Source: Dicyema japonicum (taxonomy: Eukaryota; Animalia; Dicyemida). From it: a stretch of 64,000 bases of DNA. The stretch covers positions 1,751,546 through 1,815,545 of the forward strand of contig RDEW01000003.1 in assembly GCA_011109175.1 (NCBI GenBank). The letters are read 5' to 3'. How positions within the stretch are numbered: position 1 is the first letter of the stretch; every line of letters starts with the position of its first letter. The notes beneath the pieces are model-generated. The model had not been told where the DNA came from. It saw only the letters and a list, made by a program, of their open reading frames with translations, and did no database searches. This document shows, piece by piece, positions 1-48,450 of the stretch. A program made the position numbers and the translations under genes.

Positions 1-1122
1 CTTTTATGCTCTGACAGATCCTTTTATTCAGTTGTCTGAGGGCTGTCAAAGACTTCATGTCCAACAGATGGCATCTCTTCAGCCGGTCTCTTTGTTTTAT
101 AAGACTTATTGTATAAGAGCTGAGGGTAGGAATAAACTTCTTGTATGACGATATAGGAATAAAAATATGGTCAGCTTTCTGAATGGCAGCGCTGATAATT
201 TCTGCGGCCTCATCAATAGAGCGTATTGGGGAGGATAATCTCCGAGCCAAGAATTTATCCACAAGGTTACTGAAACCAGACAAGTCAACCTTCGTATAAT
301 CCTTGAATCTTTTTGATTCCGCCGGTCGTCTCCTGTATCGTCGAAGACCTCTCAGTTTTAGAAGGATTGGATTGTGGTCACTGGAGAAGCCGTAAAAGAC
401 GTTCCAGGAAATGAGTCCAGCCAGAAAAGGTGAGCATAGTGTTAAGTCGGGGGATGTGCAGCTATCAGTCATCCTTAATGGGGTCCTCGTATGTGAGTTA
501 GGGTTGTTCAGTATAATCAGGTCAGGAAGATAATTTGCAATGAGTTCTCCTCGGTTATCGGAGGATTGGGAAGTGAGCCAAACTGGATGTCGTGCATTAA
601 GATCCCCACATAACAGTAGGTTTTTTAATGTTGAAAAATCAGGGGTGTAAGATGACGGACACGATCCTTGTGGAGGAATATATAAATTAGCCAAATGGAT
701 CCAAAAGGACGGGAATAACTCGATTTTGACAGTAATCTGTTCCAAAGTCTTGTCGGAGCCAAGAAGCTCTGAGGTTTGTTGAGTTGTATCCATAAAAGGA
801 ATATCGTTCTTTATAATAGTAAGTAGTCCTTCTCCGCGTCCTCCCTGACGATCTTTACGGATCACTGTGTATCCGGGAAAACTTCCTGATCCCATTCGTA
901 TTCAGTTGTATAATTGTAAAACCTCTTCATGGACCAGGATTGGTTTCGACGTCCCCACATTGAAGAATCAAAAGTCTGGATAAATGGGGACACCAGACAG
1001 GGTCGAAGACACAGAAGATGAGAGGACCACCGGACGGTGGTGAGAAGCTGTTGGCTCTTTTCGTTTCATTTTGGAATGGGTGACACCGTTTCTGGTGAGC
1101 CACATGACACCAAGCTAACATT
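1..1122 (-). mobile_element. Ingi/Vingi-like LINE family A, 5' half (structured head, 2A peptide, APE, linker); cut by window edge
   Basis: Near-identical to 25664-26850. Encodes LLILQCGDVETNPGP (927-971) and APE motifs (LIQE, YIPP, GDLN), with a 5' pseudoknot at 1052-1112. Confidence 0.9.
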
Positions 1123-1124
1123 AT

Positions 1125-2665
1125 TTAGAAGCCTCTGAATTAACCGTCGTTGTACAGTCTTGATAGTGTAGCCCGTGCCTGAGGTCCAAGGTGTTTGAAG
1201 TGAATAATGCAAATACCGTCGGGACAAAAAGCACGAGTGGGATGTAGCAATTTAATAGCTTTGTCAACATCATGGGGGGTGAAGAAGGTGGAATACGGTT
1301 CTTGTTACGGTCGGCGCCGTTCAACAAGTGAGAACGAGAAAAATCTATATGGCTGATAGTACTTTATAATTTTGTTTGCAAGTTTGCGTGCGGGTTCCGA
1401 AGCGTTGCGGGTGACGGCCTCAGTTCCGCGGTTCTCCATTGATAAGGTTATCGATCCTTCTTAGCGTTTTCCAAAATGTGGCACAAGAGTTTTTGTGACA
1501 TAGTCGTCCAACTAGGCGGCTCCGTTTGAGTTTGTTGTTAGTTCGGATAAGCTCAGATAATTTGGTATTCAGTGAACGTATGGAGTAGAATGAGTTATGT
1601 GTTCTTTTCCTCTTCAGCGCATCTCGTTTCTTGATTACACAATTTGAGATGATAATCTTGGATTGAACTTCTTGTAAGAGGCGACAGGTATAAATAGTTT
1701 ATCAGCTTTCAAAATGATAGCAGACAGAATTTTGGCCGTCTTCTCTACTGTACAATTAACCATAGTAAGGTCAAGGAGACTATTGTCCACATACGTCCTG
1801 AAACCTTGTCAGTCAGTTTTCAAGTAATTTTTGAACTTTGTAGAACATCACTGTGAACAAATAGAATACATCCAGCCATAGAAGGAGAGCATAGGGACAG
1901 GTCAGAGGATGTTGGACCGTCCCTTCTGAGGGACGGGGTCCTTGTGTGAGCGTCCGGGTCATTGAGGATAGTCAGATCGTTAAGTAAGGAAAGGGTATAC
2001 TAGCCGCAACTGTCGGGTGATTGTGTCCGGAGCCAGAGTGGATGTTGGCATTTAGGTCTCCGCACAGTAGCAGATCCTTTAGTCCACACAGTCTCAATAG
2101 GTTGGGGATGTAGGAAGTAGTACATGACCCCTGAGGCGGGATATAGACATTACATAGTGTAAAACATCTCGTTGAAGAAAAGGGAACTTCAATAGAAATC
2201 TGTTCCGGAATAAGATCTCCTTCGCAGAAAAAAAATACAGAAGAGGTGACATCCGTGAATTTAAGTCCATCCTTAACGATAGTCAATAGACCTCCTCCGA
2301 GACTTCTTGTTCGGTCCTTGAGAAGTACACAATATCCAGGAAAACAAGGTGTTGGGAACTTTATAGAGAGCTTCGATTCTTGGATGAGGGCAATGTCCAC
2401 TCTCAAATGGGATAAGAGGGATCGTAGTTCCAGCACTTTATTGCGGATTCCATTTACATTTAATTGTAGAATAGTCAGTGTGCAGTTGGGTCCCGGATTA
2501 GGTTCTACATCATAGACAGAAGTAGTAAAGAGAAAACGGGGGAGTTGGTAAACCACCCTTCTGAAGATCGCAGTAAGGTAGGGAAAGTCGAACGGTTTTC
2601 TTATATGCAGAACTTGCACTGAGCACCACTACAACAACAGGTGAACCGCATGACGGCATGTTACT
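1125..2665 (-). mobile_element. Ingi/Vingi-like LINE family B, degenerate (head, 2A, APE, linker, RT start)
   Basis: ORF 1972-2619 has YDVEPNPGP followed by ILQLNVNG, ALIQES, GGGLL, YIPP and GDLNA. The RT N-terminus (DVDKAIK..PDGI..HFKHLGP) near 1150-1280 is truncated by the family A copy. Confidence 0.85.
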
Positions 2666-3254: not shown

Positions 3255-3410
3255 TAATGCCGTGTGACTCACCTACGTGGTGGGATCACTAACATGAAGT
3301 GTTGGAAAAGAGTCGCAAACTCCTTATCCCGCAACCATGGACGCGCGGATGGTGTCGGATCCTGCTCCTTTCCTGTGGAGATGGCGATAACAATCCTGAA
3401 CCAGATCTAG
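3255..3410 (+). mobile_element. Solo LINE 5' head: pseudoknot plus degenerate 2A-like peptide
   Basis: Pairings TGACTC/GAGTCG, ACC/GGT and CTAACA/TGTTGG, followed by RILLLSCGDGDNNPEP. No APE follows. Confidence 0.65.
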
Positions 3411-7340: not shown

Positions 7341-7441
7341 TTTAATTAACAAATATTACCAATAATTATGATCTAATAAAAAATAAAACTTATATAAATC
7401 GTTTAAAAACATAAAAAACTGTTTATATGATCATTTAAATT

Positions 7442-8400
7442 TAGCGTAGCGTCATGTGGCTCACCAGATGCAACAATTCTAGAGGCGATCAAAATGCTCC
7501 TAAAGCATTTCCAAAAAGAGCCATTAGCTCTCTTCCACCGGGGGTACATGTCGCCCCGGTCGACGGATTACTGGTCTGGCTACAGCTTCTCGGAATTGCA
7601 ACCTACACAAGTCAAAGGACCGGATCTCCGTTATATAACTGAATGTGAACGGAATAAAAGGAAAAATTATTGAATTTAAAACTATGATTGTTACACTTAA
7701 AGCTGACATCATGCTCATCCAAGAATCGAAGCTATCAGCAAAAGATACTACGCCCTCTTTCCGGATGAACATAATACGTGTCGATCGCACTAAGAAACGT
7801 GGAGGAGGACTACTTACATTAATCAGAAAAGGCATAAAGTATGAGGACCATACACTCGAAGTGAAGAAACTTTTGGGGAGTGATGAAATCACGGAGACAA
7901 TGGGAATATCTGTTGTCACAACAAAAGGAAGACTATATTTTGTAAACATGTATATTCCGCCTCCGGGCTCATGTCCGAAACATTACACTATGCCAGATGT
8001 ATCAGCACTGGAGATTTGGAACGTGATATGCGGCGATTTGAATGCTAAACACCCTCTCTGGCTCTTAAATAAGTCTGCAGATACAATAGAAATTTGCTGT
8101 TGATGCAGTCTGGCAATCTGACAATCATCAATGACCCATCAAAAAAACACAAGAACACCTAAAAGGAACTCTGTGCAGGCAGTGCAACTCTCAACAATAC
8201 ACAGCCACGACGTGTCTTATAAGAAGGGTATACATCACCCTCTCTAATTTTTATTCCCGAAACCATCACAGAGAAGTTGTGTTAAATCCCAGAAAGCGCA
8301 CGAGGAGAAAATGAGAATTCTGATTGAGGCCTTGGAGATCACTTAATTAATTTAGTAATTAAATTAACTATTGGTGTTCTTGGGTTAATAATAATAGTAA
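7442..8400 (+). mobile_element. Ingi/Vingi-like family C, internally deleted copy 1
   Basis: Head at 7447-7523. APE (LNVNG, LIQES, GGGLL, YIPP, GDLNA) is joined to a C-terminus HEEKMRILIEALEIT* and a short 3' tail. Confidence 0.8.
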
Positions 8401-10734: not shown

Positions 10735-10985
10735 GCTGATCTGCCATGAGAGCCAACACCAAATCCTAAGAGGCCTCAGTTGTTCCAATTTTGTAAGGAG
10801 GCGCCCAGTACCTGGCCAGCATCCAAAAATGATCTATCTCTTCCCATTCCAAAGGAGGGATACAATGGCGGATAAGGATGGACGTAATGCTGAGTCGAAG
10901 TGTGTTTCACCAGTTGGAAATAGATATACTGAGAGGTCTCCTCCGGTAAATCGGGGGCTATTAAATTGTAAAAAATTATTAAATA
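10735..10985 (+). mobile_element. Degenerate short head-plus-tail LINE derivative
   Basis: GGCGCCCAGTACC..AAAAATGATC..TCTTCCCATTCC..GAGGGA resembles 22525-22590; ends in CTCCGGTAAATCGGGGGCTATTAA, similar to the LINE tails. Confidence 0.45.
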
Positions 10986-12469: not shown

Positions 12470-13505
12470 TTTTTTTTTCTACTAATATTCGTCCGAATGT
12501 GAAATTATGGCTGGCCAACTTTTTGTCTGGAAGACGTGGAAGAGTAGTCAGTGGTGATCTCAGATCTAGATCACGATTACTACCGAACGGGGTACCCCAG
12601 GGGTCTCCACTTTCACCAATTCTATTCAACCTTTTTATTACACGACCTACCTAATGATGGAGACGAAGATTCCCTGTTATTATCCTACGCAGACGACGTA
12701 GTCATTGCAATACGGAACCGCTCGACTCAAGTCGCATCCCTTAAAACTCAGACAAAATTGAACATTCTCCACGATTGGATTGCTGGCAATCGACTAACGA
12801 TTTCTGCAACCAAGTCTATCTGTTCCACATTCACGTCGGACCGTCGTTCCAAGGATGAACCGAGTCTTTTCATTGGTCCCACTAGGATTCCAGTGACAAA
12901 GTCCCCCATTGTCCTTGGAGTCAAGTACGACACCCTTCTCAAATTCAACTCCCACGCAACAGACATGATCACCAGGGGCCTCCAGAAAGTTAACGTTATA
13001 CGCGCCCTTGTTCGGAGGACCACGAGGAACATGGACTTTTCCGTCTCTACACTCTACCAACAAACAATCGCGCCTGCCATTGAGTATGCCTCCGTTGCAT
13101 GGAGATTCGGGCTATCGGAGTCTTTGGTCCAAAGAATCAACTCGATATACCGGAAAACAATCAGTATGCTTTCCCCACGTAATGGATCAACAGTCGACCC
13201 ACTACTCATGGAAGCTAAGATCCGTAGTCGTGGCTCCGGATTTCTTCGCCTCTGTGAGGAAGATGGAAATCCGCTTCGCCTAATCCTTCCCATGGCAAGA
13301 GAAAACCGATTGGATAAGAAATTCCCTCCCCGATCGGATTCCTCTGCAAGACCGAGAGAAGGCTCTTCCGGAAAGTAGTGGGGACGATGGAGGATCACAG
13401 ACGTCGAATGGCACAAGTGATTGCGAGGACTGGGATCACCTAACTGTCTGACTCTTTTGTCTTTCTTTCTCGGTGTTCCCGGGGTTATTAAATAAAAAAA
13501 TATTT
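12470..13505 (+). mobile_element. Ingi/Vingi-like family A, 5'-truncated copy (RT C-half and 3' tail)
   Basis: Motifs GVPQGSPLSP and YADD; almost identical to 29650-30670; A-rich tail. Confidence 0.92.
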
Positions 13506-14879
13506 AAATGTTAAATTTTTTAATTCTCTTTTGGTACATCTCTCACCGCCACAAAAGAATGTATAAAGATCTTGTATAAACAATTTATTTGGACGATATT
13601 CAATTATGCCTCCAAAAGTTGACCCTAAAAATCTAATTTTTACTTGAATTTAGTAACTGTGGCGCATCTGTAAGGTCCTCACTAATCTTCGGAAAAAATC
13701 ACCTCCGCCAAAAAACCGAACCTGGACCGAAGAATACACGACTTATTGTCTACACGTATCACATGGACCCTGAGATTAACGCTTCTGAACTGCTGCTCTT
13801 GAGGGCTGCATGTCAGCGACGTTGACATCATCAACCTCTCGGTGAAAAAAGTTCTGGATTATATTTTTTGTCCTGGACCACCAGGGCCGACATAAAAGTG
13901 GAGGATCTCTTGGAGCAACTTGCATTGATATAAGTTTATCTATACTCTGTCTATGTTACCTGGATTGTGAAAAAATTGAGTTTTTAAATTTTTTAAGTTT
14001 CTAATGTTTCTTTTAATTAAAGAAGTTGTCGGTATTTGGCAGAAACTTCTTGATAGATCTAATGAAAACAATGATTCAAGACAAAATGGCCAATTTATGG
14101 AACTGAGCCATAGTCGACCGTCGTATATAAAACTTTTGGCTCTGTAATAGGTGAAGATAGATACTGACGAAGAGTTGTTTATTATTTGTTAACCACATCT
14201 TTGGTAAGCCCAGTCGTAGGGTAATTAATCCAAGGAGGGAACGCAAGGGAGAACGTCTGCTTGTGACGACCAAATTGAAATTACCAGGGATGAATTTACC
14301 GGTTACCTATTGGAGATGATGCATAACCATGTCTGATTCTTATTGCGATACCCGAAACATACACCAGTTGTTGTAGGAAACGCTAAACGTTTCGCCAATT
14401 ATGTGACGATTCACCAAAGCATCCTTTGGGATCGGAAGTTAGATCATATCTGAAATTCTCCCTAAGATCACTTGATTAGACGACTCTTGTCTTTTCTCTT
14501 GTAATTCTACAAGTTAATTAATTAAATTACAAGAGAATATACAAGAGGATATTGAAGGAACCATAATGCTAGAGATATATCTAAGGCCTGGTCGAGGAAT
14601 GACCCATAAAAATATGATGTTTCTATTGACTGTATAGATTGCGTGTAGTTTTAACGGTAACCAAGGAAAGCATCAATTCAGTGATTCGAACCATTGTGAC
14701 CTCTGATAATTTGTTCCAAGACATTCGATTACTTATGCGATAATATTGTCCTCAACTACTGAGGATCAAAGCCACTGAGTTACCTCAGTATTGAAGTCAC
14801 ATGGGATAGACTTGGATGTGTTCCATTAGGAAATAGAAAATTATCCTGGAAGGATTTAAGTTTTGAAGTATTTATGTAC

Positions 14880-22150: not shown

Positions 22151-22492
22151 ATGCCTTGGCGAACTTATCTTAAATTTTTAACTTTAATAAAATTTAGGTT
22201 GATTTTTTAGCTTTTATGGTCGAGAAGGAAGATAATCCAATTCCTTGGTGATTAATCACTGATGATCGCGTCACTTGTAAACCCTTGAGCATCGTAGATG
22301 CGTTAAACCTTCACCGAATAGACAGCAGCGAAATTCAAACAGGGGACCGCAATCAATCAAACGGTCGAATAATAAAATTATTTTTTTCCAAGAATTTAAA
22401 AACATATAGCCGCGTGGCGCCATGTGGTGCTGTGGTGGTTAATTGGTTGAAGTTTTCTGCTTGCTTGTCTGTTCCTCCTCTCTCTTCCTAAT

Positions 22493-22728
22493 AGAGTGGC
22501 GTCATGTGATCCACCTGTCTAGGTGACGCCCAGTGCCAGGCTGGCACGAAAAAGGATCATTTGCTCTTTCCCACTCCACTAGAGGGATTTCCACAACTGC
22601 ATGTAACGGACGTCTTACCTTTTATGCTGATTCCAGATGGACTCTGTTTCTGTAGAAATGGAAACTGGATACACTTAATTAGTTGTTAACTTTAACTTCT
22701 TTCTCGGTGTATCCGGGGTTAATTTTAT
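22493..22728 (+). mobile_element. ~235-bp bipartite non-autonomous LINE derivative (5' pseudoknot plus 3' tail)
   Basis: Fully paired head at 22498-22559; ends ACTGGATACACTTAA..TTCTCGGTGTATCCGGGGTTA. Confidence 0.75.
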
Positions 22729-22729
22729 T

Positions 22730-23770
22730 TATAACCCCGAAAAGGGAACACCAAGAAAGGAGTAAACCAACTAATTAAGTGATCCCGGTACGCCTCAATA
22801 GGATCGAGAGGTTTTTCCTATGTTCCTCCAGAGTACCCACGGCTTTCCTGAATAGCCGACGATCATCCTTCATTAGAGTTTGAAGAGGGGTGGGTTTTTT
22901 CTCCGATTTCGTGTATTTGAGGCCTTTAGCCTTGAATGGAAGAAACGACTTGTTTCTTGGCCACATAGACCGATGAAGCCGGAGCCATTATTTTTGATTG
23001 CGGCGTGGTCAAGCATTGGGGGGGGGGAAAGATCGGGGGTAGATTCGTTAAACGTGCCAGTTTGCCAATTAGGGAATTGATCTTGAATAAATTTGATAGG
23101 CCCATGAGGCACAAGCATACTCTATCGTCGGTTTTAGTTGATTGAAACAAGACGACAGCGCTTTCCTGTGACGGCCTGGACTTTAAGAGCGGTTTGATTA
23201 TATTTAGTTTCCTGAGACCCTTTGTCATAACGTTCTTCACATGTTGGGAAAATGTCATCAAAGGGTCAAATGTCACTCCCAGGATAGTTGGACGAATCTG
23301 TAATGGTAAGGAGTCTCCAAATGTTCAAATCCAGTGTATGTTTTTCTTTTCTGTCCGTGGTGAAGATTGTATACGTTGATTTATCCCTGGATATGGAGAC
23401 GATTCAACTTTAACCAGGCTCCCAGGTTGTCAATATGTGACTGAAGCTCTGATTTTGCTGCACCCACGTATTTGTTCCTGCTAGCGATGATTAGGTCGTC
23501 AGCATAAGTGAGAAGCATTGAATCTGGTCCTCCATGGAAGGGTAAATCGTTGAGGAATAAGTTGAATAACGCCGGAGAGAAAGGCGATCCTTGAGGGACG
23601 CCATTTGGTAGGAGACGGAACCTCGTGGCCTATACAGACACGTCCTCTTCTTCCGGAGAGAAAATTGGCTATCTATCTTTTCAAATCCGGCTGAATGGTG
23701 TCAAAAACCTTTTTCGTGAGAAATGTTCTCGAGACAGAATCGAACGCCTTCTTGATATCCAGGGAAATAA
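22730..23770 (-). mobile_element. Ingi/Vingi-like LINE 3' part
   Basis: Encodes GVPQGSPFSP, YADD-like TYADD, LGVTFDP; ends EEHRKNLSILLRRTGIT*. Confidence 0.85.
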
Positions 23771-25220: not shown

Positions 25221-25662
25221 CTTTAAAATATAAAAATTATGTTTCTACGATAGTTGCTTATAATAATAAAAACATTAAACTATGGCCAAAAAAATTAAGA
25301 AAATCGTGTAATTTGGAATTAATTTCGTCTGTTTGGAGAAAAATTGGATCTTGAAGTTTTCCATTTTTTCGTTTTAATTTGGGTCGCATGCACATTGAGA
25401 AAACTGTATTTACTGTACATTTTAAACACTTAGGATCTCAGCTGAGGCTCGTGTTTTCAGATTTATATAATTTTCTTATAAATTCCCACACACTTTCAGA
25501 TATCACCAACCAAATGAAGCCTAACTAAATCCCAACTAAAATAATATCAATTCGCCTAGATTTCAGATTATCTGGAAGAACTCATTGATTACGCCAATTC
25601 TGAAGACAAGAAAACTGAGGGATAATTCATCTTTCTATCGCCATGTCTTAAAATTCAGGAAA

Positions 25663-28600
25663 AATGTTAGCGTGGTGTCATGTGGCTCACCAGAAACGGT
25701 GTCACCCATTCCAAAATGGAACGAAAAGAGCCAACAGCTTTTCCCCACCGTCTGGTGGTCCTTTCATCCCCTGTGTCTTCGACCCTGTCTGGTGTCCCCA
25801 TTTATCCAGACTTTTGATTCTTCAATGTGGGGACGTCGAAACCAATCCTGGTCCATGGAGAGGTTTTACAATTATACAACTGAATACGAATGGGATCAGG
25901 AAGAAAATCTTTGAACTCCGGGCACTCCTCCGCGAAAATGAGGCTGACCTCGCTTTAATACAGGAGTCCAAGCTATCTCCCTCCATACCAACACCTTCTT
26001 TTCCCGGATACACAGTGATCCGTAAAGATCGTCAGGGAGGACGCGGAAGAGGACTACTTACTATTATAAAGAACGATATTTCTTTTTATGGATACAACCC
26101 AACGAACCTCGGAGCTTCTTGGCTCCGACAAGACTTTGGAGCAGATTACTGTCAAAATCGAGTTATTCCCATCCTTTTGGATCCATTTGGCTAATATATA
26201 TATTCCTCCACAAGCATCGTGTCCGTCATCTTACACCCCTGATTTATCACGCATTTCAACATTGAAGAATCTACTGTTATGTGGGGATCTTAATGCACGA
26301 CATCCAATTTGGCTCACTTCCCAATCCTCTGATAACCGAGAACTCATTGCAAATTATCTTCCTGACCTGATTATACTGAACAACCCTAACTCACATACGA
26401 GGACCCATTAAGGATGACTGATAGCTGCACATCCCCCGACTTAACATTATGCTCACCTTCTCTGGCTGGACTCATTTCCTGGAACGTCTTTTACGGCTTC
26501 CCAGTGACCACAATCCAATCCTTCTAAAATTGAGAGGTCTTCGACGATACAGGAGACGGTCGGCGGAATCAAAAAGATTCAAGGATTATACGAAGGTTGA
26601 CTGGTCTGGTTTCAGTAACCTTGTGGATAAATTCTTGGCCGGGAGATTATCCTTCCCAATACGCTCTATTGACGAGGCCGCAGAAATTATCAGCGCTGCC
26701 ATTCAGAAAGCTGACCATATTTTTATTCCTATATCGTCATACAAGAAGTTTATTCCTACCCTCAGCTCTTATACAATAAGTCTTATAAAACAAAGAGACC
26801 GGCTGAAGAGATGCCATCTGTTGGACATGAAGTCTTTGACAGCCCTCAGACAACTGAATAAAAGAATCTGTCAGAGCATAAAAGAACACAAGGACAAGAG
26901 ATGGCAGCATCTAGTTAACCACCTCGACAGGAAAAGTACATCCCGACACTTCTGGAAAACTTTTAAACAAGTCAAGTCGGAGCTGGATGATGCAGACGGA
27001 ACCGGAAAGTCTTCTCCTGAACACTTATGCCACCTACATCCTAACATCCTTATGAAACATTACGCTGGAATTAGCTTCAAACCATTCTCGAAACACCTGG
27101 ACATTTAGGTGCGTGCCCATAAACCGAAGAAGGAACCTTATCACGAACTATTCACAGATGACCAAGTCTTGGATGTGATCACCAGATTAAAAAGCTCACG
27201 GGCGTGCGGGCCTGACAAAGTATCCTCTATTCTGTCACATGGGCGGCGCGTAACGCATGGGCAGCCTGTTACATTTTTTCGACCTTGAAAAGGTCTTTTG
27301 ATTATCCGACATTATTATTATTAATGTCGGATCACTGGTCAAAGGAAAGAAATAAAAGTTCTCATCTAACTAAGTGATCCCAGACCGACAAAGATGAGGA
27401 TGAGTCCCTCATTGGATTATCTGACATTTAATTTTATATATCCGATTTATATCTTGATTTAATCCTGTTAAATTAGTTTTTTATTTATAAATGTTATGAT
27501 TATAAAGATTTTATTTTTTTATAGCGGTAAACCTAGATTTCTAGCGTGATTTATAGCATGGAAGATTATTTTGTTGCAATGGCTTCTTACAAGGGTTTTG
27601 TGAAAGATTGCGTTGAATATCAAACTTTAAAAGATGCTTTGCATGATAAATTCCCGAAAACCTTCCGAGGCACCGAAAATATAGGCTTGTAAAGAAGATA
27701 GAGAATTTTTCTATTATCAATGACAGGTATTGTAAATTTTCAATAATTTTAGACTGTATCTTAAATCAACTGATCCCAAGTTAGTCATATCCCTGGATAA
27801 TGAAACCGAAATGGAGCATGTTGCGAAATCGTTGCACGAGTTTTCACACGGAGGAGTCAATAAAATTGAGTATGAATGTCGACAAAGATACTTCACTGTA
27901 AAGAATGAGATTATCAGAAAAGTCATTCGAAATTGTGAAGTCTGCAAATTTTCGCGTTCTTTAAAAATTCGTGATTTTTTATAATTGTAGATTGGAGATA
28001 TAAATCACCATGTGTTTGGTTCTTCTCCAAATGAACGTTTTCAGGTAGATCTAATAGACCTGAAAAAATTTTCAACATTAAATGAAAATTTCAAATGGAT
28101 TTTAACGGTCATTGACATATATAGTAGGCTGGTTTTTTTAATTTATAGATTCGCTTTTGTACGACCACTCTATAATAAGTCTGGTAAAGAAATATCCACC
28201 TGAATGGGCCATGTAAATTTCTTCAGTCGGACAATGGTTCTGAATTTAAAAATCAAGAAATAACAAAATTTGCGAAGATTTTAACATTAAGCAAATTCAC
28301 GGAAGGCCTAACAATCCACGAGCACAAGGAATTGTCGAAAGATTTAATCAGACGATCACGAGGAAGTTGTCAAAAATGCTGGATAACAGTGAAAAAAAGT
28401 GGTTTGATAAATTAGAAAGTGCTGTCTACAGTTACAACATATCGGTCCATTTCATTTTCTAACGAAAAGTCCTTTCGAAAGATATCGAGGAATTAAGGGA
28501 ATAAATTCAATAATTAATGGTTATACTTATATCATTATGACTTAGATAATTTAAGTGATGAGTGTGCGATTCCAGAACAAATTGACGATTTGGTTAATTG

Positions 28601-30690
28601 TTCGACTCCAGAATCTATTGAAAAATCACGTAGTTTGATTTAAAAAATTTATATCTAGATAAATCCCAGTCAGATAATTTGCGTCCGAATGCGAAGAGAT
28701 TCAACTTCGAAATTAAATCGATTGAAGAAAATTCAAATTATTACAAAGCTATGAACAGGAAAATGAATGTTCATAATAGTAAATATACTTTTAACATGGG
28801 AGATAAAGTATGAATCAAAAACATTAATAAATAGGTTCGGGCTAAAAAGGACTTTGGAACAAATCCCTCATTGCGACTGGATAAGTTTGAGTCTCAGTAT
28901 TATCCAGTTGCAGAAATAATTATTTTATCGAATAATCGCGTGGAGGTAGTTTTAAATAGTTTAATTTTTGAACTCTTTTTCATTAATAAATTCTCTTTAA
29001 AATGAAAAAAAAAAAAAAATTTGATAGATAAAAAATTCGAAAGGAGAAATATCGACTGTATTAATGAGTAGACTAAAAAAAGTTACTTAAATTTAATTTT
29101 TTGTGGTTAATAAATCATTTATAAAATTAATTGAAGTTAATCTTGGCTTAAGGTTATAAAATTAATTGAAGTTAATCTTGGTTCAAGGTTAATGTAACAG
29201 GCTGCCCATAGGTAACGCTTGGCCCATGTGACATATTCACCTAAAACACCTAAGCCACTACGCAATTGGCTACCTCACGCATATATACAACCTGTCCATT
29301 AACTATAATATTATTCCTAAGATTTGGAAGAATTCTATCATCAGACCGATATTGAAGGCTGGGAAACCAGAGACAGAACCTTCATCCTACAGGCCTATTT
29401 CCGTTACCAGCACACTGTCAAAAATTATGGAGAAACTTGTATTATCAGTCATTATTCCGTATCTTCCGCGTCCTATATTTCAACATGGTTTCCTCCGCGG
29501 TAGGTCCACCGCTACATACTTGGCAACTTTATCGCAGTTCATTGCCGACGGTTTTAACACCCATCTCCCGCCTCACAAACGCACAATCTTGGTTTCTATT
29601 GACATCAACAAAGCCTTTGACACTGTTTCGAGGAAAATCTTGGTTGGAAAAATACTAATATTCGTCCGAATGTGAAACTATGGCTGGCCAACTTTTTGTC
29701 TGGAAGACGTGGAAGAGTAGTCAGTGGTGATCTCAGATCTAGATCACGATTACTACCGAACGGGGTACCCCAGGGGTCTCCACTTTCACCAATTCTATTC
29801 AACCTTTTCCTACACGACCTACCTAATGATGGAGACGAAGATTCCCTGTTATTATCCTACGCAGACGACGTAGTCATTGCAATACGGAACCGCTCGACTC
29901 AAGTCGCATCCCTTAAAACTCAGACAAAATTGAACATTCTCCACGATTGGATTGCTGGCAATCGATTAACGATTTCTGCAACCAAGTCTATCTGTTCCAC
30001 ATTCACGTCGGACCGTCGTTCCAAGGATGAACCGAGTCTTTTCATTGGTCCCACTAGGATTCCAGTGACAAAGTCCCCCATTGTCCTTGGAGTCAAGTAC
30101 GACACCCTTCTCAAATTCAACTCCCACGCAACAGACATGATCACCAGGGGCCTCCAGAAAGTTAACGTTATACGCGCCCTTGTTCGGAGGACCACGAGGA
30201 ACATGGACTTTTCCGTTTCTACACTCTACCAACAAACAATCGCGCCTGCCATTGAGTATGCCTCCGTTGCATGGAGATTCGGGCTATCGGAGTCTTTGGT
30301 CCAAAGAATCAACTCGATATACCGGAAAACAATCAGTATGCTTTCCCCACGTAATGGATCAACAGTCGACCCACTACTCATGGAAGCTAAGATCCGTAGT
30401 CGTGGCTCCGGATTTCTTCGCCTCTGTGAGGAAGATGGAAATCCGCTTCGCCTAATCCTTCCCATGGCAAGAGAAAACCGATTGGATAAGAAATTCCCCT
30501 CCCCGATCGGATTCCTCTGCAAAACCGAGAGAAGGCTCTTCCGGAAAGTAGTGGGGACGATGGAGGATCACAGACGTCGAATGGCACAAGTGATTGCGAG
30601 GACTGGGATCACCTAACTGTCTGACTCTTTTGTCTTTCTTTCTCGGTGTTCCCGGGGTTATTAAAATAAAAATAAATAAATAAATAAACA
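25663..30690 (+). mobile_element. Full-length (~3 kb net) Ingi/Vingi-like LINE family A, interrupted by a Ginger transposon
   Basis: Head 25673-25733; 2A GDVETNPGP 25829-25855; APE; RT continuous across the insertion (DKVSSI|HLKHL); GVPQGSPLSP and YADD; no RNase H seen; ends RTGIT* with (TAAA)n; a few stops and frameshifts. Confidence 0.92.
27233..29233 (+). mobile_element. Ginger-type (integrase-like) DNA transposon, decayed
   Basis: ~43-bp TIRs TGTCACATGGGC..ATGGGCAGCCTGTTACATT, ends TGT and ACA; 5-bp TSD TATTC; HHCC finger (HEFSH..CEVC); integrase core FQVDL..QSDNGSEF..GIVERFN. Confidence 0.88.
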
Positions 30691-37312: not shown

Positions 37313-39249
37313 CTATTAAGGATTATTAAAATATAGTTCACATAATTCTAATTATTAAAAATGCCTTAATAATAATCAAAGTCGAAAATAAAAGATAGTG
37401 GTACTCAGATAAGATCATAAATACACAAAAAGGTCATATACCGTGACATAGATGGGATCGACGATTTTTTGCAAAATTTTGAGTTCATAGCCGCAATCCA
37501 TTTGAAATAACAAGCCTATTAATTAATGTTAGTCGGAAATTAGTCATTTAAATTAATAAGGTTATTACAACTAACAACTTAAAGAAAGGTCAATTGTTTC
37601 TATTTAAAAAATATATTATATTTTTTAAATTAAATATTTTTATATTTAATTTATATTATAATATTTTAATTACTATTTATTTTTAATTGTTTTGCTATAA
37701 AACAATTTTTAATTTAAACACTTAATAATCGAAATATAATTTTAGCTCTACTACCACCTTAAGGACGAATTCTCAATGAAACTCTCTATTATAATTTAAT
37801 TAGTAGTATATAGTTCAACATTTCTCAACGAGATCCCTAACAATTTTAAAATAAATAAAATAAAAATATAAATTCGAATTTGAATTATTTCGTGTTTTTC
37901 ATTTTTCTAAAATGACGTGTGTTGAGATGTTTCCATTTGACAAGGCATTATTTTAATTTTAAATTAACCACGAAATTAGATATTTTTTGTGGACTTTTAA
38001 AAACTTTTTTTCTGTTAAATTTATTGTCTTGATATATCAGTTCTATTAGAAATCATGTAATGATTTTAAAATTCCTAGATTTCATTAGGGAATTTAAAAA
38101 AGTAGATTATTCAAGGAGAGTCACGGATTTAAAAGACCTAAAATGTTAAACAAATGTGATTTCGAGACGATTAAAGAGTTCATACTGCTTCGGTCTTGTT
38201 TATTCCTTAGAAGACTTTATAAGAATTAGTGAAAGATGTTTAATAGAAGCAACATTGTGAGCGTTGACATGAATGTCAAATGAACTTAACGTCACCATAA
38301 AAAATATATTACTTTATTAATAATTTCAAATAATCAATTCGAAGGGTCTTACGGTAACCTGACTGTGTGGTTATTCCCTCTCAGATTCTCTCAAATTATT
38401 AGCATCGCCAGTTCTTGTAGAAATCCGATTCCCTAGCCGACCCAGGAATTCAAGCGTCGAAGGCGTAGGAAGTAATTATCCCAGTCTTCAGAATTATGCG
38501 TACTAATGCCCGATCCTCATGGAAAAGCCATGAGGAGTTAGTCTTACTGCTGGAGGTCATCATCGTAAATGAGATCAAAGTCATAAATGGAGAGCTCAAT
38601 TTTGATCGTTACCACTTTTGTGAGATGGAAGGAAACAGCGACTGCCAGAACAGGGAGGTGTTATTTCACAGATGTAACCCAAAGACATTATAATTACAAA
38701 TCATTAAGTCACAAGTCTAAATGTATCTGGTAATTGATATCATGGAGAATGGTTGGAGATTTTTATTCAAATCTCATGATACCTGTTTCCATGACCTCTT
38801 CATATTCTGTTCTAACCGAAATTCTACTTCGGACGTTTACAAAACAACCAACCAAGATCAACTAAAGACTTTTTGACAGAATGGGGTTTAAACTGCAATC
38901 ATCTAAATAGCCAACCAACATTCACCAAGTAATGGAGACAAACTATGAGTTTTTTCGGTTTCCCCACGTGTTCCAACACTGTGGACCATTCCACCGGATA
39001 TCAGTTGTGACCCATACCATAAAGGATGAAATGAAATTATTCAAAGACCAAGGGTGAATCCAAACTGACTAATTCTGTAATTCTCACACGTTCTAGTAGA
39101 GTTTTCATCTAGGCACAGTGATCCAGGAAGCTAAGGTCAAAGTCAGAATTAGTCGCCAGGGAGTGAAGTAGTCTCCTGATGGAATGAAGAGATGGATCCT
39201 TTTGAATACCAGCTAGGCATTGGGGGTTGATACTAGACGAGTAAGTGGG

Positions 39250-41243: not shown

Positions 41244-41349
41244 AAGTGGAGTTATGTGGTTAACCAATTATGTAAGTGTTGGTAATGCCTAGAGGGCATC
41301 TAGTGTTCCTTCAAAGAAAACCATTAAACATTTACCTTCTAAGAAACTG

Positions 41350-47084: not shown

Positions 47085-48450
47085 TACCATTGCGTGGCTC
47101 ACCGGATGCAACAATTCTGGAGGCGATCAAAATGCTCCTAAAGCATTTCCAAAGAGAGACATTAGCTCTCTTCCACCGGGGGTATATGTCGCCCTCGGTT
47201 GACGGATTACTGGTCTGGCTACTGCTTCTCGGATTCGCAACCTACACAAGTCAAAGGACCGGATCTCCGTTATATAACTGAATGTAAACGGAGTAAAAGG
47301 AAAAATTATTGAATTTAAAACTATGATTGTTACACTTAAAGCTGACATCGTGCTCATCCAAGAATCGAAGCTATCAGCAAAAGATACTACGCCCCTCTTT
47401 CCGGGATGAACATAATACGTGCCGATCGCACTAAGAAACGTGGAGGAGGACTACTTACATTAATCAGAAAAGGCATAAAGTATGAGGACCATACACTCGA
47501 AGTTAAGAAACTTTTGGGGAGTAATGAAATCACGGAGACAATCGGAATATCTGTTGGCACAACAAAAGGAAGACTATATTTTGTAAACATGTATATTCCG
47601 CCTCCGGGCTCATGTCCGAAACATTACACTATGCCAGATTTATCAGCACTGGAGATTTGGAACGTGATATGCGGCGATTTGAATGCTAAACACCCTCTCT
47701 GGCTCTTAAATAAGTCTGCAGATACAATAGAAATTTGCTGTTGACGCAGTCTGGAAATCTGACAATCATCAATGATCCATTAAAAAAGACAAGAACAGCT
47801 CAAAGGAACTCTTACAATCCAGAACACCTACATATAAAAGATCATTATGCTCTCCCAAAATCAAATTGTTTAGATATGAAATTCCTATGAATAAGTCACC
47901 AACAATACTAGGATTAAAGTTGGATACTCTCCTGACATTCTGCCAACACGTCAATGACGTTATTGCCAAGGTCAGGAGAAGGTCCAACATATTGAAAATT
48001 TTGTCCCGATCACCAATCGGGAGCAACACCTTTTTACTACAGAAAAATTACAGACAATACATACTGCCAGTAATCGAATACACATGTTCTTCCTGGAGCT
48101 CGATGATTTCTGAATCGTCGTCTCAAAAAATAGAAGCCGCACAACTTGCTGCCTTGAAAATAACAAATAAGAAAACTGTGGATAACGTATTGAATCTTAA
48201 AGAACACCTAAGGTTGCGAGTGAACTCAATTCTACAGTGGGCAATGAAAACCGGCTGTCCGCTTTCACTCTCTATATCTGACTATGTAGAAAATGCGGGG
48301 AATCTATGGAGAATGAGACCGTCCCCGTTTCTACCAATTCTGTTGGATTTTCGAGGACCCCGAACGAGAGCCAGAACCGGAAAACCGGGATCATTTAGTT
48401 AGTAGTTAACTTTTTCTAATCCGGTGATCTTGGGGCAAAAAAAAATTCAG
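47085..48450 (+). mobile_element. Ingi/Vingi-like family C, internally deleted copy 2
   Basis: 5' part nearly identical to 7457-8170; then LGLKLDTLLTF..; ends RKTGII* with tail CCGGTGATCTTGGGG and an A-run. Confidence 0.82.

What the first reader, a model, noticed from the sequence alone, without database searches (positions are those of the whole stretch)
22497..22559. Covarying 5' double pseudoknot in at least five divergent LINE families: HDV topology, non-HDV core
The cleanest copy folds as P1 GGCGTC/GACGCC, linker ATG, P2 TGATCC/GGATCA, P3 ACCT/AGGT, then CA, P4 GTGCCA/TGGCAC and a GAAAAA linker. The same order recurs with compensatory changes. At 25673-25733 and 1052-1112 (-): P2 TGGCTC/GAGCCA, P1 GGTG/CACC, P4 TTCCA/TGGAA. 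At 7447-7523: P2 TGGCTC/GAGCCA, P4 AAATGCT/AGCATTT. At 2593-2658 (-): P2 CGGTT/AACCG, P4 GTGCA/TGCAT. At 3256-3315: P2 TGACTC/GAGTCG, P3 ACC/GGT, P4 CTAACA/TGTTGG. Partial copies may lie at ~10740-10835 and ~39165-39245 (-). The nested P1-P2-P3-P1'-P4-P2' order is that of HDV-like ribozymes, which are known at the 5' end of Ingi/L1Tc-clade elements. However, L3 is variable (TGTCTA, AGAAAC, TACGT, or an extended hairpin), there is no GG for P1.1, and a J4/2 cytosine is not always present. The conserved parts are GTC-ATG, ACC, the CA after P1' and the A-run. This could be a non-canonical self-cleaving RNA, or a catalytically dead fold kept for translation initiation or as an internal promoter.
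Basis: partly seen in the sequence, partly recalled or inferred. Interest (0 to 1): 0.82.

Follow-up and report, generated by a model that had tools for sequence, protein, structure and literature searches.

The report
HDV-shaped RNA knot heading octopus LINEs
A roughly 60-base RNA fold shaped like the hepatitis-delta self-cutting RNAs sits at the front of several octopus jumping genes (LINEs) and inside a very abundant short repeat; the fold is real and kept by compensating mutations, but a leader copied along with it makes its self-cutting doubtful.

Summary
Eight heads (seven in the window, one in an annotated Octopus sinensis gene) share the order P1-P2-P3-P1'-P4-P2'. 90.7% of pair cells are standard pairs, against 77.8% in shuffles and 32-56% in slid controls. 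Thirteen of 20 pairs change on both sides. P1, which makes the knot and was not in the search model, has moderate support.

It is an HDV-type fold at the head of 2A-APE-RT LINEs, as in L1Tc and R2, and a short non-autonomous element also carries it.

A cytosine followed by N and an A-run (C-N-AAAA), like HDV C75/A77/A78, precedes P2' in most copies. The conserved ATG in J1/2 is the annotated start codon in O. sinensis.

Against cutting:
- L3 is not conserved, and no Rfam HDV-like model matches.
- Family B has a U-U mismatch in P1.
- A 9-14 nt leader upstream of the predicted cut is inherited by independent copies. In family B it carries the only in-frame ATG.

Verdict: a new variant of a known kind. 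It is probably a ribozyme-derived structural head, and cleavage is unproven. This scan has already found the same fold many times on other pieces of this genome.

The parts
22498..22559 (+). Copy A, the cleanest fold. P1 22498-22503 with 22525-22530; J1/2 ATG 22504-22506; P2 22507-22512 with 22554-22559; P3 22513-22515 with 22522-22524; L3 22516-21; J1/4 CAG 22531-33; P4 22534-38 with 22542-46; J4/2 CGAAAAA 22547-53.
   Evidence: The DNA contigs list no majority difference inside the fold, so this copy is probably close to the family consensus (67 further differences were not shown).
22405..22731 (+). Short non-autonomous element holding copy A. It starts with a partial second copy of leader+P1+ATG+P2 (TAGCCGCGTGGCGCCATGTGGTGC, about 22408-22431). 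A CT-rich spacer follows, then the full fold, a body, and the LINE 3' tail at 22697-22731.
   Evidence: Unique contigs stop at 22432 and summed depth jumps from about 500 to over 300,000. Tail match to LINE tails. Alignment A9.
25660..25673 (+). Leader of LINE family B (AAAAATGTTAGCGT) upstream of the predicted cut. It holds ATG 25664, the only ATG in frame with the 2A-APE reading frame.
   Evidence: Homology between B and B' starts at 25660/1125. The same leader is seen in C and L001. Contig joints fall at 25659-25666. Translation.
25674..25733 (+). Copy B fold: P1 GGTGTC/GTCACC (U-U mismatch), P2 TGGCTC/GAGCCA, P3 ACC/GGT, P4 TTCCA/TGGAA, J4/2 CGAAAA.
25832..25855 (+). 2A StopGo core DVETNPGP ending the leader peptide of ORF 25664-26194. 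The APE domain follows.
1052..1125 (-). Copy B', 96% identical to B: fold at 1052-1111 plus leader at 1112-1125.
7437..7523 (+). Copy C: leader AAAT-TTAGCGT, then the fold at 7448-7523 with P1 AGCGTC/GGCGAT, P2 TGGCTC/GAGCCA, an extended P3 hairpin, P4 AAATGCT/AGCATTT and J4/2 CCAAAAA.
47094..47165 (+). Copy C', 96% identical to C and truncated at its 5' end within J1/2. The TGG frame after the ATG runs in frame into APE.
2593..2657 (-). Copy D: P2 CGGTT/AACCG, P4 GTGCA/TGCAT, weak GU-rich P1, no J4/2 C. A 2A (DVEPNPGP) and APE follow.
3256..3315 (+). Copy E: P2 TGACTC/GAGTCG, P3, P4 CTAACA/TGTTGG, P1 shifted 3 nt (ATGCC/GGGAT, 4 of 5), no J4/2 C, and no APE downstream.
41248..41323 (+). The ATG is in frame with a decayed APE.
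10740..10835 (+). Partial, decayed A-like copy (GGCGCC-CA ... CCAAAAA TGATCT).
39165..39245 (-). A-like copy truncated at its 5' end (3' half only).
30636..30690 (+). LINE 3' tail TTCTTTCTCGGTGTTCCCGGGGTTA plus an (AAAT)n-type repeat. The same tail ends copy A and occurs at 13463 and 24989.

Best explanation
The stretch is one copy of a conserved 5' head module of octopus 2A-APE-RT LINEs (Ingi/L1Tc-like in layout) and of short elements that depend on them.

As RNA the module folds into the nested double pseudoknot of the HDV-like (delta) ribozymes: P1, P2, a 3-bp P3, P4, a 3-nt J1/2 and an A-rich J4/2 that usually starts with C. It most likely descends from a delta-type 5' ribozyme of the kind known in L1Tc, R2 and RTE.

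In these families it now works mainly as a structural head. It holds the start codon: the ATG in J1/2 in L001, F and C', and an ATG 10 nt upstream in B. Its first ~20 codons are therefore dictated by RNA structure, and the 2A StopGo peptide discards them before the endonuclease.

Self-cleavage at the first base of P1 may survive at a low or conditional rate in the better-formed families (A, L001). [quoted passage not shown]

Shown: the fold, the covariation, the position before 2A-APE, the inherited leader and the frame of the ATGs.
Inferred: descent from a ribozyme, a role in translation or RNP assembly, and weak cleavage.
For: - Fold and covariation.
- Eight heads and nothing else above noise.
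- APE follows B, B', C, C', D and F.
- 2A peptides.
- The J1/2 ATG is the annotated start of O. sinensis LOC115229065 and is in frame with its 2A. It is in frame with APE in F and C'.
- In B only the leader ATG 25664 is in frame.
- The leader is shared by independent insertions B and B' and by families C and L001. Contigs of other copies join at 25659-25666, not 25674.
- The R2 literature states that self-cleavage of the template removes upstream bases, so they are not propagated. It also states that P1 mismatches such as U-U go with loss of activity (PMC3774820).
- C-N-AAAA before P2' in A, B, C, L001 and the two partial copies.
- The non-coding element A keeps the fold although ATG is followed directly by TGA, so the constraint is on RNA, not on protein.
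Against: - A conserved J4/2 cytosine has no obvious role in a purely structural knot. It hints at catalysis.
- L1Tc-clade ribozymes with a non-canonical core (C1, one-pair P1.1) do cleave (PMC3185411, PMC4035085), so a variable core does not exclude activity.
- The sample is small: 7 distinct families, related by descent.
- No RNA data could be obtained.
- The translation role is inferred from position only.
Confidence: 0.5

Rival explanations
1. It is a fully active HDV-like self-cleaving ribozyme. It releases the element RNA from read-through transcripts by cutting 5' of P1, as in L1Tc, R2 and RTE. This leaves a 5'-OH RNA with the AUG at +7 that is translated without a cap.
For: - Exact delta topology with a 3-bp P3, a 6-bp P1 directly after P3', a 3-nt J1/2 and C-N-AA in J4/2.
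- L001 has GG after P1' and a C in L3, which allows P1.1.
- Non-autonomous elements keep the fold, as NARTc/SIDER and R2 SIDEs do (PMC4035085, PMC3414825).
- L1Tc-type cores are non-canonical yet active.
- The fold has about 4 times the summed depth of its flanks in element A.
Against: - A 9-14 nt leader upstream of the cut is inherited in B, B', C, L001 and A.
- The only in-frame ATG of family B would be cut off.
- L3 differs completely between families, and there is no G-U wobble at the cut site.
- Family B has a U-U mismatch in P1.
- No Rfam HDV-like hit even at E<=10.
Confidence: 0.3
2. The conserved head acts at the DNA level as an internal promoter (a 'LINE promoter' head). The pairings are secondary. 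The conserved GTCATGTG would then be a protein-binding site of E-box type (CATGTG).
For: - L1Tc Pr77 is both promoter and ribozyme.
- Mollusc 'LP-SINEs' carry a ~70-bp head shared with Nimb and RTE LINEs, which was read as a promoter (PMC4758252).
- The leader and J1/2 are the most conserved sequence blocks.
Against: - A promoter does not explain compensatory changes in P2, P4 and P1.
- ATG is kept in D and F, where the CATGTG box is broken.
- In element A the fold is about 93 nt inside the element.
Confidence: 0.12
3. The pairings are chance complementarity in related repeat copies, read too generously.
For: With G-U allowed, 5-of-6 matches to the P1 strand occur at several other offsets. P1 slid by -3 pairs almost as well. 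Single-copy folding z-scores are weak for B and D.
Against: P2 and P4 change on both sides in nearly every family while staying paired. Shuffles never reach the observed values (0/500) and slid controls drop to 32-56%.
Confidence: 0.03

Closest known systems
L1TcRz / Pr77 hallmark of Trypanosoma cruzi L1Tc, NARTc and trypanosomatid SIDERs (PMC3185411, PMC4035085, PMC3383444)
   Same: Both have an HDV-like fold of about 60-77 nt at the head of an APE-RT LINE, followed by a 2A peptide at the start of the ORF (the L1Tc 2A is from my own knowledge, not read here). Short non-autonomous derivatives keep the fold in both. The core is non-canonical in both: no G1-U wobble, and P1.1 reduced to one pair. 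A dual role has been discussed for L1Tc.
   Different: L1Tc copies begin exactly at the cut site, and cleavage has been shown in vitro. Here a leader of 9-14 nt is inherited upstream of P1, nothing is shown biochemically, and there is no sequence similarity. The host is a cephalopod, not a kinetoplastid.
R2, RTE and Baggins HDV-like ribozymes of animals (PMC3774820; Ruminski et al. 2011 J Biol Chem, cited from memory)
   Same: Both are 5' delta-fold elements of non-LTR elements. The ORF runs through or starts in the fold, and a proposed second role is translation initiation. Internally deleted parasites keep the ribozyme plus the 3' end (PMC3414825).
   Different: In R2 the P1.1/P3/L3 block is highly conserved and upstream bases are not propagated. 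Here L3 is the most variable part and the leader is propagated.
LP-SINE / Nimb-17_LMi-type LINE 5' head (PMC4758252)
   Same: Both are ~68-70-bp 5' heads shared by otherwise unrelated LINE families and by mollusc SINEs, followed by a CT-rich stretch. In both, homology is limited to the head.
   Different: That head was read as a promoter and no RNA fold was proposed. Its sequences are not in the held text, so I could not test identity with this fold. It is a lead only.
Rfam HDV-like families (HDV ribozyme, CPEB3, drz-Agam and others)
   Same: Same helix order and same position of the J4/2 cytosine.
   Different: No match at gathering score over the whole window. No match at E<=10 on the heads of A, B and L001.

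Membership tests
HDV-like (delta) self-cleaving ribozymes | Nested double pseudoknot with the order P1-P2-P3-P3'-P1'-P4-P4'-P2', and P1' directly after P3' | tested here: met
   Eight heads. 90.7% of cells are paired, 13 of 20 pairs change on both sides, and 0/500 shuffles reach this. P1 alone has moderate support.
HDV-like (delta) self-cleaving ribozymes | Catalytic cytosine in J4/2, followed by adenosines that dock on P3 (C75, A77, A78 in HDV) | tested here: inconclusive
   C-N-AAAA precedes P2' in A (if the last P4 pair opens), B, B', C and L001. In F a C directly precedes AAAGAAA. Both partial copies have a C before the A-run. It is absent in D and E. Presence of a C does not show catalysis.
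HDV-like (delta) self-cleaving ribozymes | P1.1 (1-2 pairs between L3 and J1/4) and a conserved L3 active-site loop | tested here: not met
   L3 is TGTCTA, AGAAAC, TTTTCT, TACGT or a 9-15 nt hairpin. J1/4 is CA in most copies. Only TG/CA (A, D) or a single G-C (B) can be drawn. L001 alone has GG plus a C in L3.
HDV-like (delta) self-cleaving ribozymes | G1-U wobble (or at least a stable P1 without mismatches) at the cleavage site | tested here: not met
   The closing pair is G-C in A, B and F, A-U in C and C-C in L001. B has a U-U mismatch inside P1. L1Tc-clade members also lack G1.
HDV-like (delta) self-cleaving ribozymes | [quoted passage not shown] | not testable with these tools
   Only DNA contigs were available. 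Indirect evidence points against cleavage of the copied RNA: the leader is inherited.
HDV-like (delta) self-cleaving ribozymes | Match to a curated covariance model (Rfam) | tested here: not met
   No hit at gathering score, and none at E<=10 on 121-181 nt pieces.
Ribozyme-headed LINE of the L1Tc/Ingi type | Head fold, then an N-terminal 2A peptide, then APE and RT. Non-autonomous derivatives keep the head. | tested here: met
   2A DVETNPGP and DVEPNPGP. APE and RT Pfam hits. APE follows the heads. Element A keeps the fold plus the LINE tail. One related protein is named 'Tcoingi protein-like' by its source. Clade membership by RT phylogeny was not tested.

The most novel reading that the evidence does not exclude
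The delta fold has been turned from a cutter into a start-codon holder. It would be a pseudoknot that carries the AUG in J1/2, recruits ribosomes or the element's own protein to uncut RNA, and has its structure-dictated peptide discarded by 2A.

The same module would also be the unrecognised RNA behind conserved 'LINE promoter' heads and SINE core domains shared across mollusc (and perhaps other animal) repeat families.
Probability: 0.2. Interest if true: 0.75.

Novelty: new variant of a known kind. Interest (0 to 1): 0.45.

Why it matters
HDV-like ribozymes at LINE 5' ends are known, so the class is not new. Three points would matter if confirmed.

- This is a cephalopod example with the full L1Tc-like layout (fold, 2A, APE-RT, fold-bearing parasites). 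That would suggest the layout is ancient or arose more than once.
- The fold is inherited behind a leader and carries the start codon. That makes it a natural test case for what a delta fold does when it is not, or not only, a 5' processing device. The question has been open since the proposal that such ribozymes promote translation initiation.
- The module is present at thousands of times single-copy depth, and at several times the depth of its own flanks. It may therefore be the conserved core of abundant octopus SINEs, whose core domains have no known function.

Tried and rejected
- Rfam search at gathering score on the window, and at E<=10 on the heads of A, B and L001. No HDV-like hit; the only match was a chance speF hit.
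- A loose descriptor scan of my own matched everywhere and was useless.
- Protein word search with the ORF of B found nothing. With P0001 it found only 3 proteins, so no further octopus heads could be collected that way.
- A profile search gave 6502 APE relatives, and 75 of the top 150 carry NPGP. The six other loci I fetched (L002-L007, unknown eukaryotes from metagenomes and Logan assemblies) show no such head with the model.
- A metagenome pattern scan gave 36 loci. The ones I read are bacterial coding sequence, so chance matches.
- The sequencing-run search returned only DNA contigs of one sample. No RNA ends could be read, and 'places where many molecules begin or end' came back empty.
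- tRNA scan of the window, looking for a SINE head: none.
- A target-site duplication for C using the tail at 13463 was rejected. That tail belongs to a B copy truncated at its 5' end.
- I rejected the idea that D and E lack P1 entirely. The model alignment shows weak P1 versions: D with three G-U pairs, E shifted by 3 nt.
- An E-box reading of GTCATGTG was considered. ATG is better conserved than CATGTG.

Full report
**What is there**

At 22498-22559 the sequence reads GGCGTC ATG TGATCC ACC TGTCTA GGT GACGCC CAG TGCCA GGC TGGCA CGAAAAA GGATCA.

The other listed copies carry the stated pairings. The two 'partial' copies are 3' halves of A-like folds.

I built a covariance model from A, B and B' with only the nested helices P2, P3 and P4. 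A second model built from all eight heads found nothing further in the window.

**Is it more than chance?**

On the eight-row alignment:
- 90.7% of pair cells are standard pairs, against 77.8 +/- 1.8 in shuffles (0/500) and 32-56% when partners are slid.
- 13 of 20 pairs change on both sides, against 4.6 +/- 1.6 (0/500).
- P2 covaries at four of six positions.
- P4 has a different sequence in nearly every family.
- P3 (ACC/GGT) hardly varies, so it says little either way.

P1 is what makes this a pseudoknot rather than a three-way junction, and it was not in the model. For P1 alone:
- 84.1% of cells are paired, against 76.7% in shuffles (4/500).
- 4 of 6 pairs change on both sides (11/500).
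- A slide of -3 pairs almost as well, and 5-of-6 matches with G-U occur at other offsets.

P1 per copy:

| Copy | P1 pairs |
|---|---|
| A | 6/6 |
| B | 5/6, with a U-U mismatch |
| C | 5/6, after an extended P3 |
| L001 | 5/6 |
| F | 5/6 |
| D | 5/6, three of them G-U |
| E | 4/5, shifted by 3 nt |

The fold is real. P1 is supported, but only moderately on this small and related sample.

**Context**

- Pfam finds APE and RT domains in the neighbouring ORFs.
- tblastn shows APE coding sequence 130-200 nt downstream of heads B, B', C, C', D and F. It shows none after A or E.
- Between fold and APE lie canonical 2A peptides, DVETNPGP in B and DVEPNPGP in D.
- A profile of the 2A-APE region finds thousands of relatives. 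Half of the top 150 carry NPGP.
- The best relative is O. sinensis LOC115229065. One relative is named 'Tcoingi protein-like' by its source.
- The genome is therefore octopus-like, and the elements have the L1Tc/Ingi layout: head fold, 2A, APE, RT.
- The LINE 3' tail (TTCTTTCTCGGTGT.CCGGGGTTA plus an AAAT-type repeat) also ends the short element that holds copy A.

**The short element A**

DNA contigs of four runs of one sample show single-copy depth of about 490 up to 22432, then hundreds of thousands. The repeat therefore starts near 22405, about 93 nt before the fold.

Its first ~25 nt (TAGCCGCGTGGCGCCATGTGGTGC) are a second, partial copy of leader+P1+ATG+P2.

From the bin means and the point depths, I estimate the following summed depths:
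- the fold: about 3.6-4.7 million
- 22569, just downstream: 0.95 million
- upstream of the fold: at most about 0.9 million

So the 62-nt module appears to be shared by more repeats than its flanks are. The tool warns that these sums are not copy numbers, so this is rough.

No majority difference is listed inside the folds of A or B, so both are probably near their family consensus. Part of that list was not shown.

**The core**

I find C-N-AAAA directly before P2' in A (CGAAAAA, if the last G-C of P4 opens), B (CGAAAA), C (CCAAAAA) and L001 (CTAAAAA). In F a C directly precedes AAAGAAA. The partial copies have CCAAAAA and TCAAAA. D and E lack it. This is the HDV pattern C75-N76-A77-A78 (my knowledge of HDV).

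L3, in contrast, is different in every family. J1/4 is CA in most copies, so only TG/CA or a single G-C could form P1.1. L001 alone has GG after P1' and a C in L3.

No Rfam family matches, even at E<=10 on short pieces.

Two papers bear on this:
- L1Tc-clade ribozymes start with C1, have a one-pair P1.1, and still cleave. Their authors call the usual search descriptor too restrictive (PMC3185411, PMC4035085).
- In R2 the P1.1/P3/L3 block is highly conserved, and P1 mismatches such as U-U go with loss of activity (PMC3774820).

**The leader**

B and B' are independent insertions, yet their homology starts 14 nt before P1. The leader AAT(G)TT..TAGCG(T) is also shared by families C and L001, and in altered form by A. 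Contigs of other B copies join at 25659-25666, not at 25674.

An HDV-type cut removes everything upstream. For R2 it is stated that such bases are therefore not propagated (PMC3774820). So the RNA that was copied had not been cut at P1.

**The start codon**

- In the O. sinensis gene the conserved ATG of J1/2 is the annotated start and is in frame with the 2A. An ATG 18 nt upstream is in frame too.
- In F and C' the J1/2 ATG frame runs into APE.
- In B and D it is out of frame. In B the only in-frame ATG is 25664, in the leader, and a cut at P1 would remove it.
- The first ~20 codons are thus dictated by the RNA fold. The 2A then discards that peptide. This is a tidy reason for having a 2A there, but it is an inference.
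- Element A keeps the fold although ATG is followed at once by TGA, so the constraint is on the RNA.

**Reading**

The module has the delta-ribozyme architecture and part of its core, and it sits where such ribozymes are known to sit. The variable L3, the P1 mismatch in B, the inherited leader and the leader ATG argue that cutting does not make the 5' end here.

My estimates:
- 0.5 for a ribozyme-derived structural head (start-codon presentation or protein binding) with weak or conditional cleavage at most.
- 0.3 for a fully active 5' ribozyme.
- About 0.12 for a DNA-level promoter.
- A few percent for chance.

**Lead from the literature**

Mollusc 'LP-SINEs' and Nimb and RTE LINEs of locust, zebrafish and turtle share a ~70-bp 5' head followed by a CT-rich stretch. 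It was read as a promoter (PMC4758252). The sequences are not in the held text, so identity with this fold is untested.

**Earlier notes of this scan**

Earlier notes describe the same fold on many other pieces of this genome, with the same open question about the leader. I used them as leads only.

**What failed**

- No RNA runs were available.
- No further octopus heads could be collected through proteins.
- Other eukaryotic 2A-LINE loci lack the head.
- The metagenome pattern scan gave chance bacterial matches.

Noticed in passing
window 22667-22785: Two LINE-type tails lie tail to tail around 22726, making a 120-nt imperfect palindrome (CCGGGGTTA ... TAACCCCG). It looks as if a second element inserted into the AAAT-type tail repeat of the first.
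   Followed up: partly
window 12480-13509 and 29653-30681: A 1-kb copy of LINE family B, truncated at its 5' end, is 98.8% identical to the 3' end of B. This points to recent activity of this family.
   Followed up: partly
window 22408-22431: Element A begins with a partial duplicate of the head (leader, P1-like GGCGCC, ATG, P2-like TGGTGC) about 80 nt before the full fold. The upstream GGCGCC could pair 5/6 with P1' GACGCC, like the duplicated P1 sites discussed for R2.
   Followed up: partly
heads of A, B, C, D, E and L001, directly 3' of P2' (e.g. window 22560-22590, 25734-25760): A second conserved block, (N)AGCTCT-TTCCC(C)ACC, which is CT-rich, follows the fold in all families. Its role is unknown. 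The published LP-SINE heads are also followed by a CT-rich stretch.
   Followed up: no
proteins P0001-P0150: Many 2A-bearing LINE proteins from unrelated eukaryotes share a short motif such as VFSVSRP, VFSSVE or FFGASRP 15-30 residues before the 2A. This could reflect a conserved RNA element rather than a protein motif.
   Followed up: no
The region lies next to LINE RT coding sequence (RVT_1 hit at 12551-13378), so frameshifted LINE ORF pieces are an alternative reading. Not examined.
   Followed up: no
L027:319-367 (-), soil metagenome contig: This GC-rich stretch was picked by the search pattern. It also has a 5-bp P2' complement and a 5/6 P1 but no P4. About one such hit is expected by chance among the 36 loci.
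   Followed up: partly
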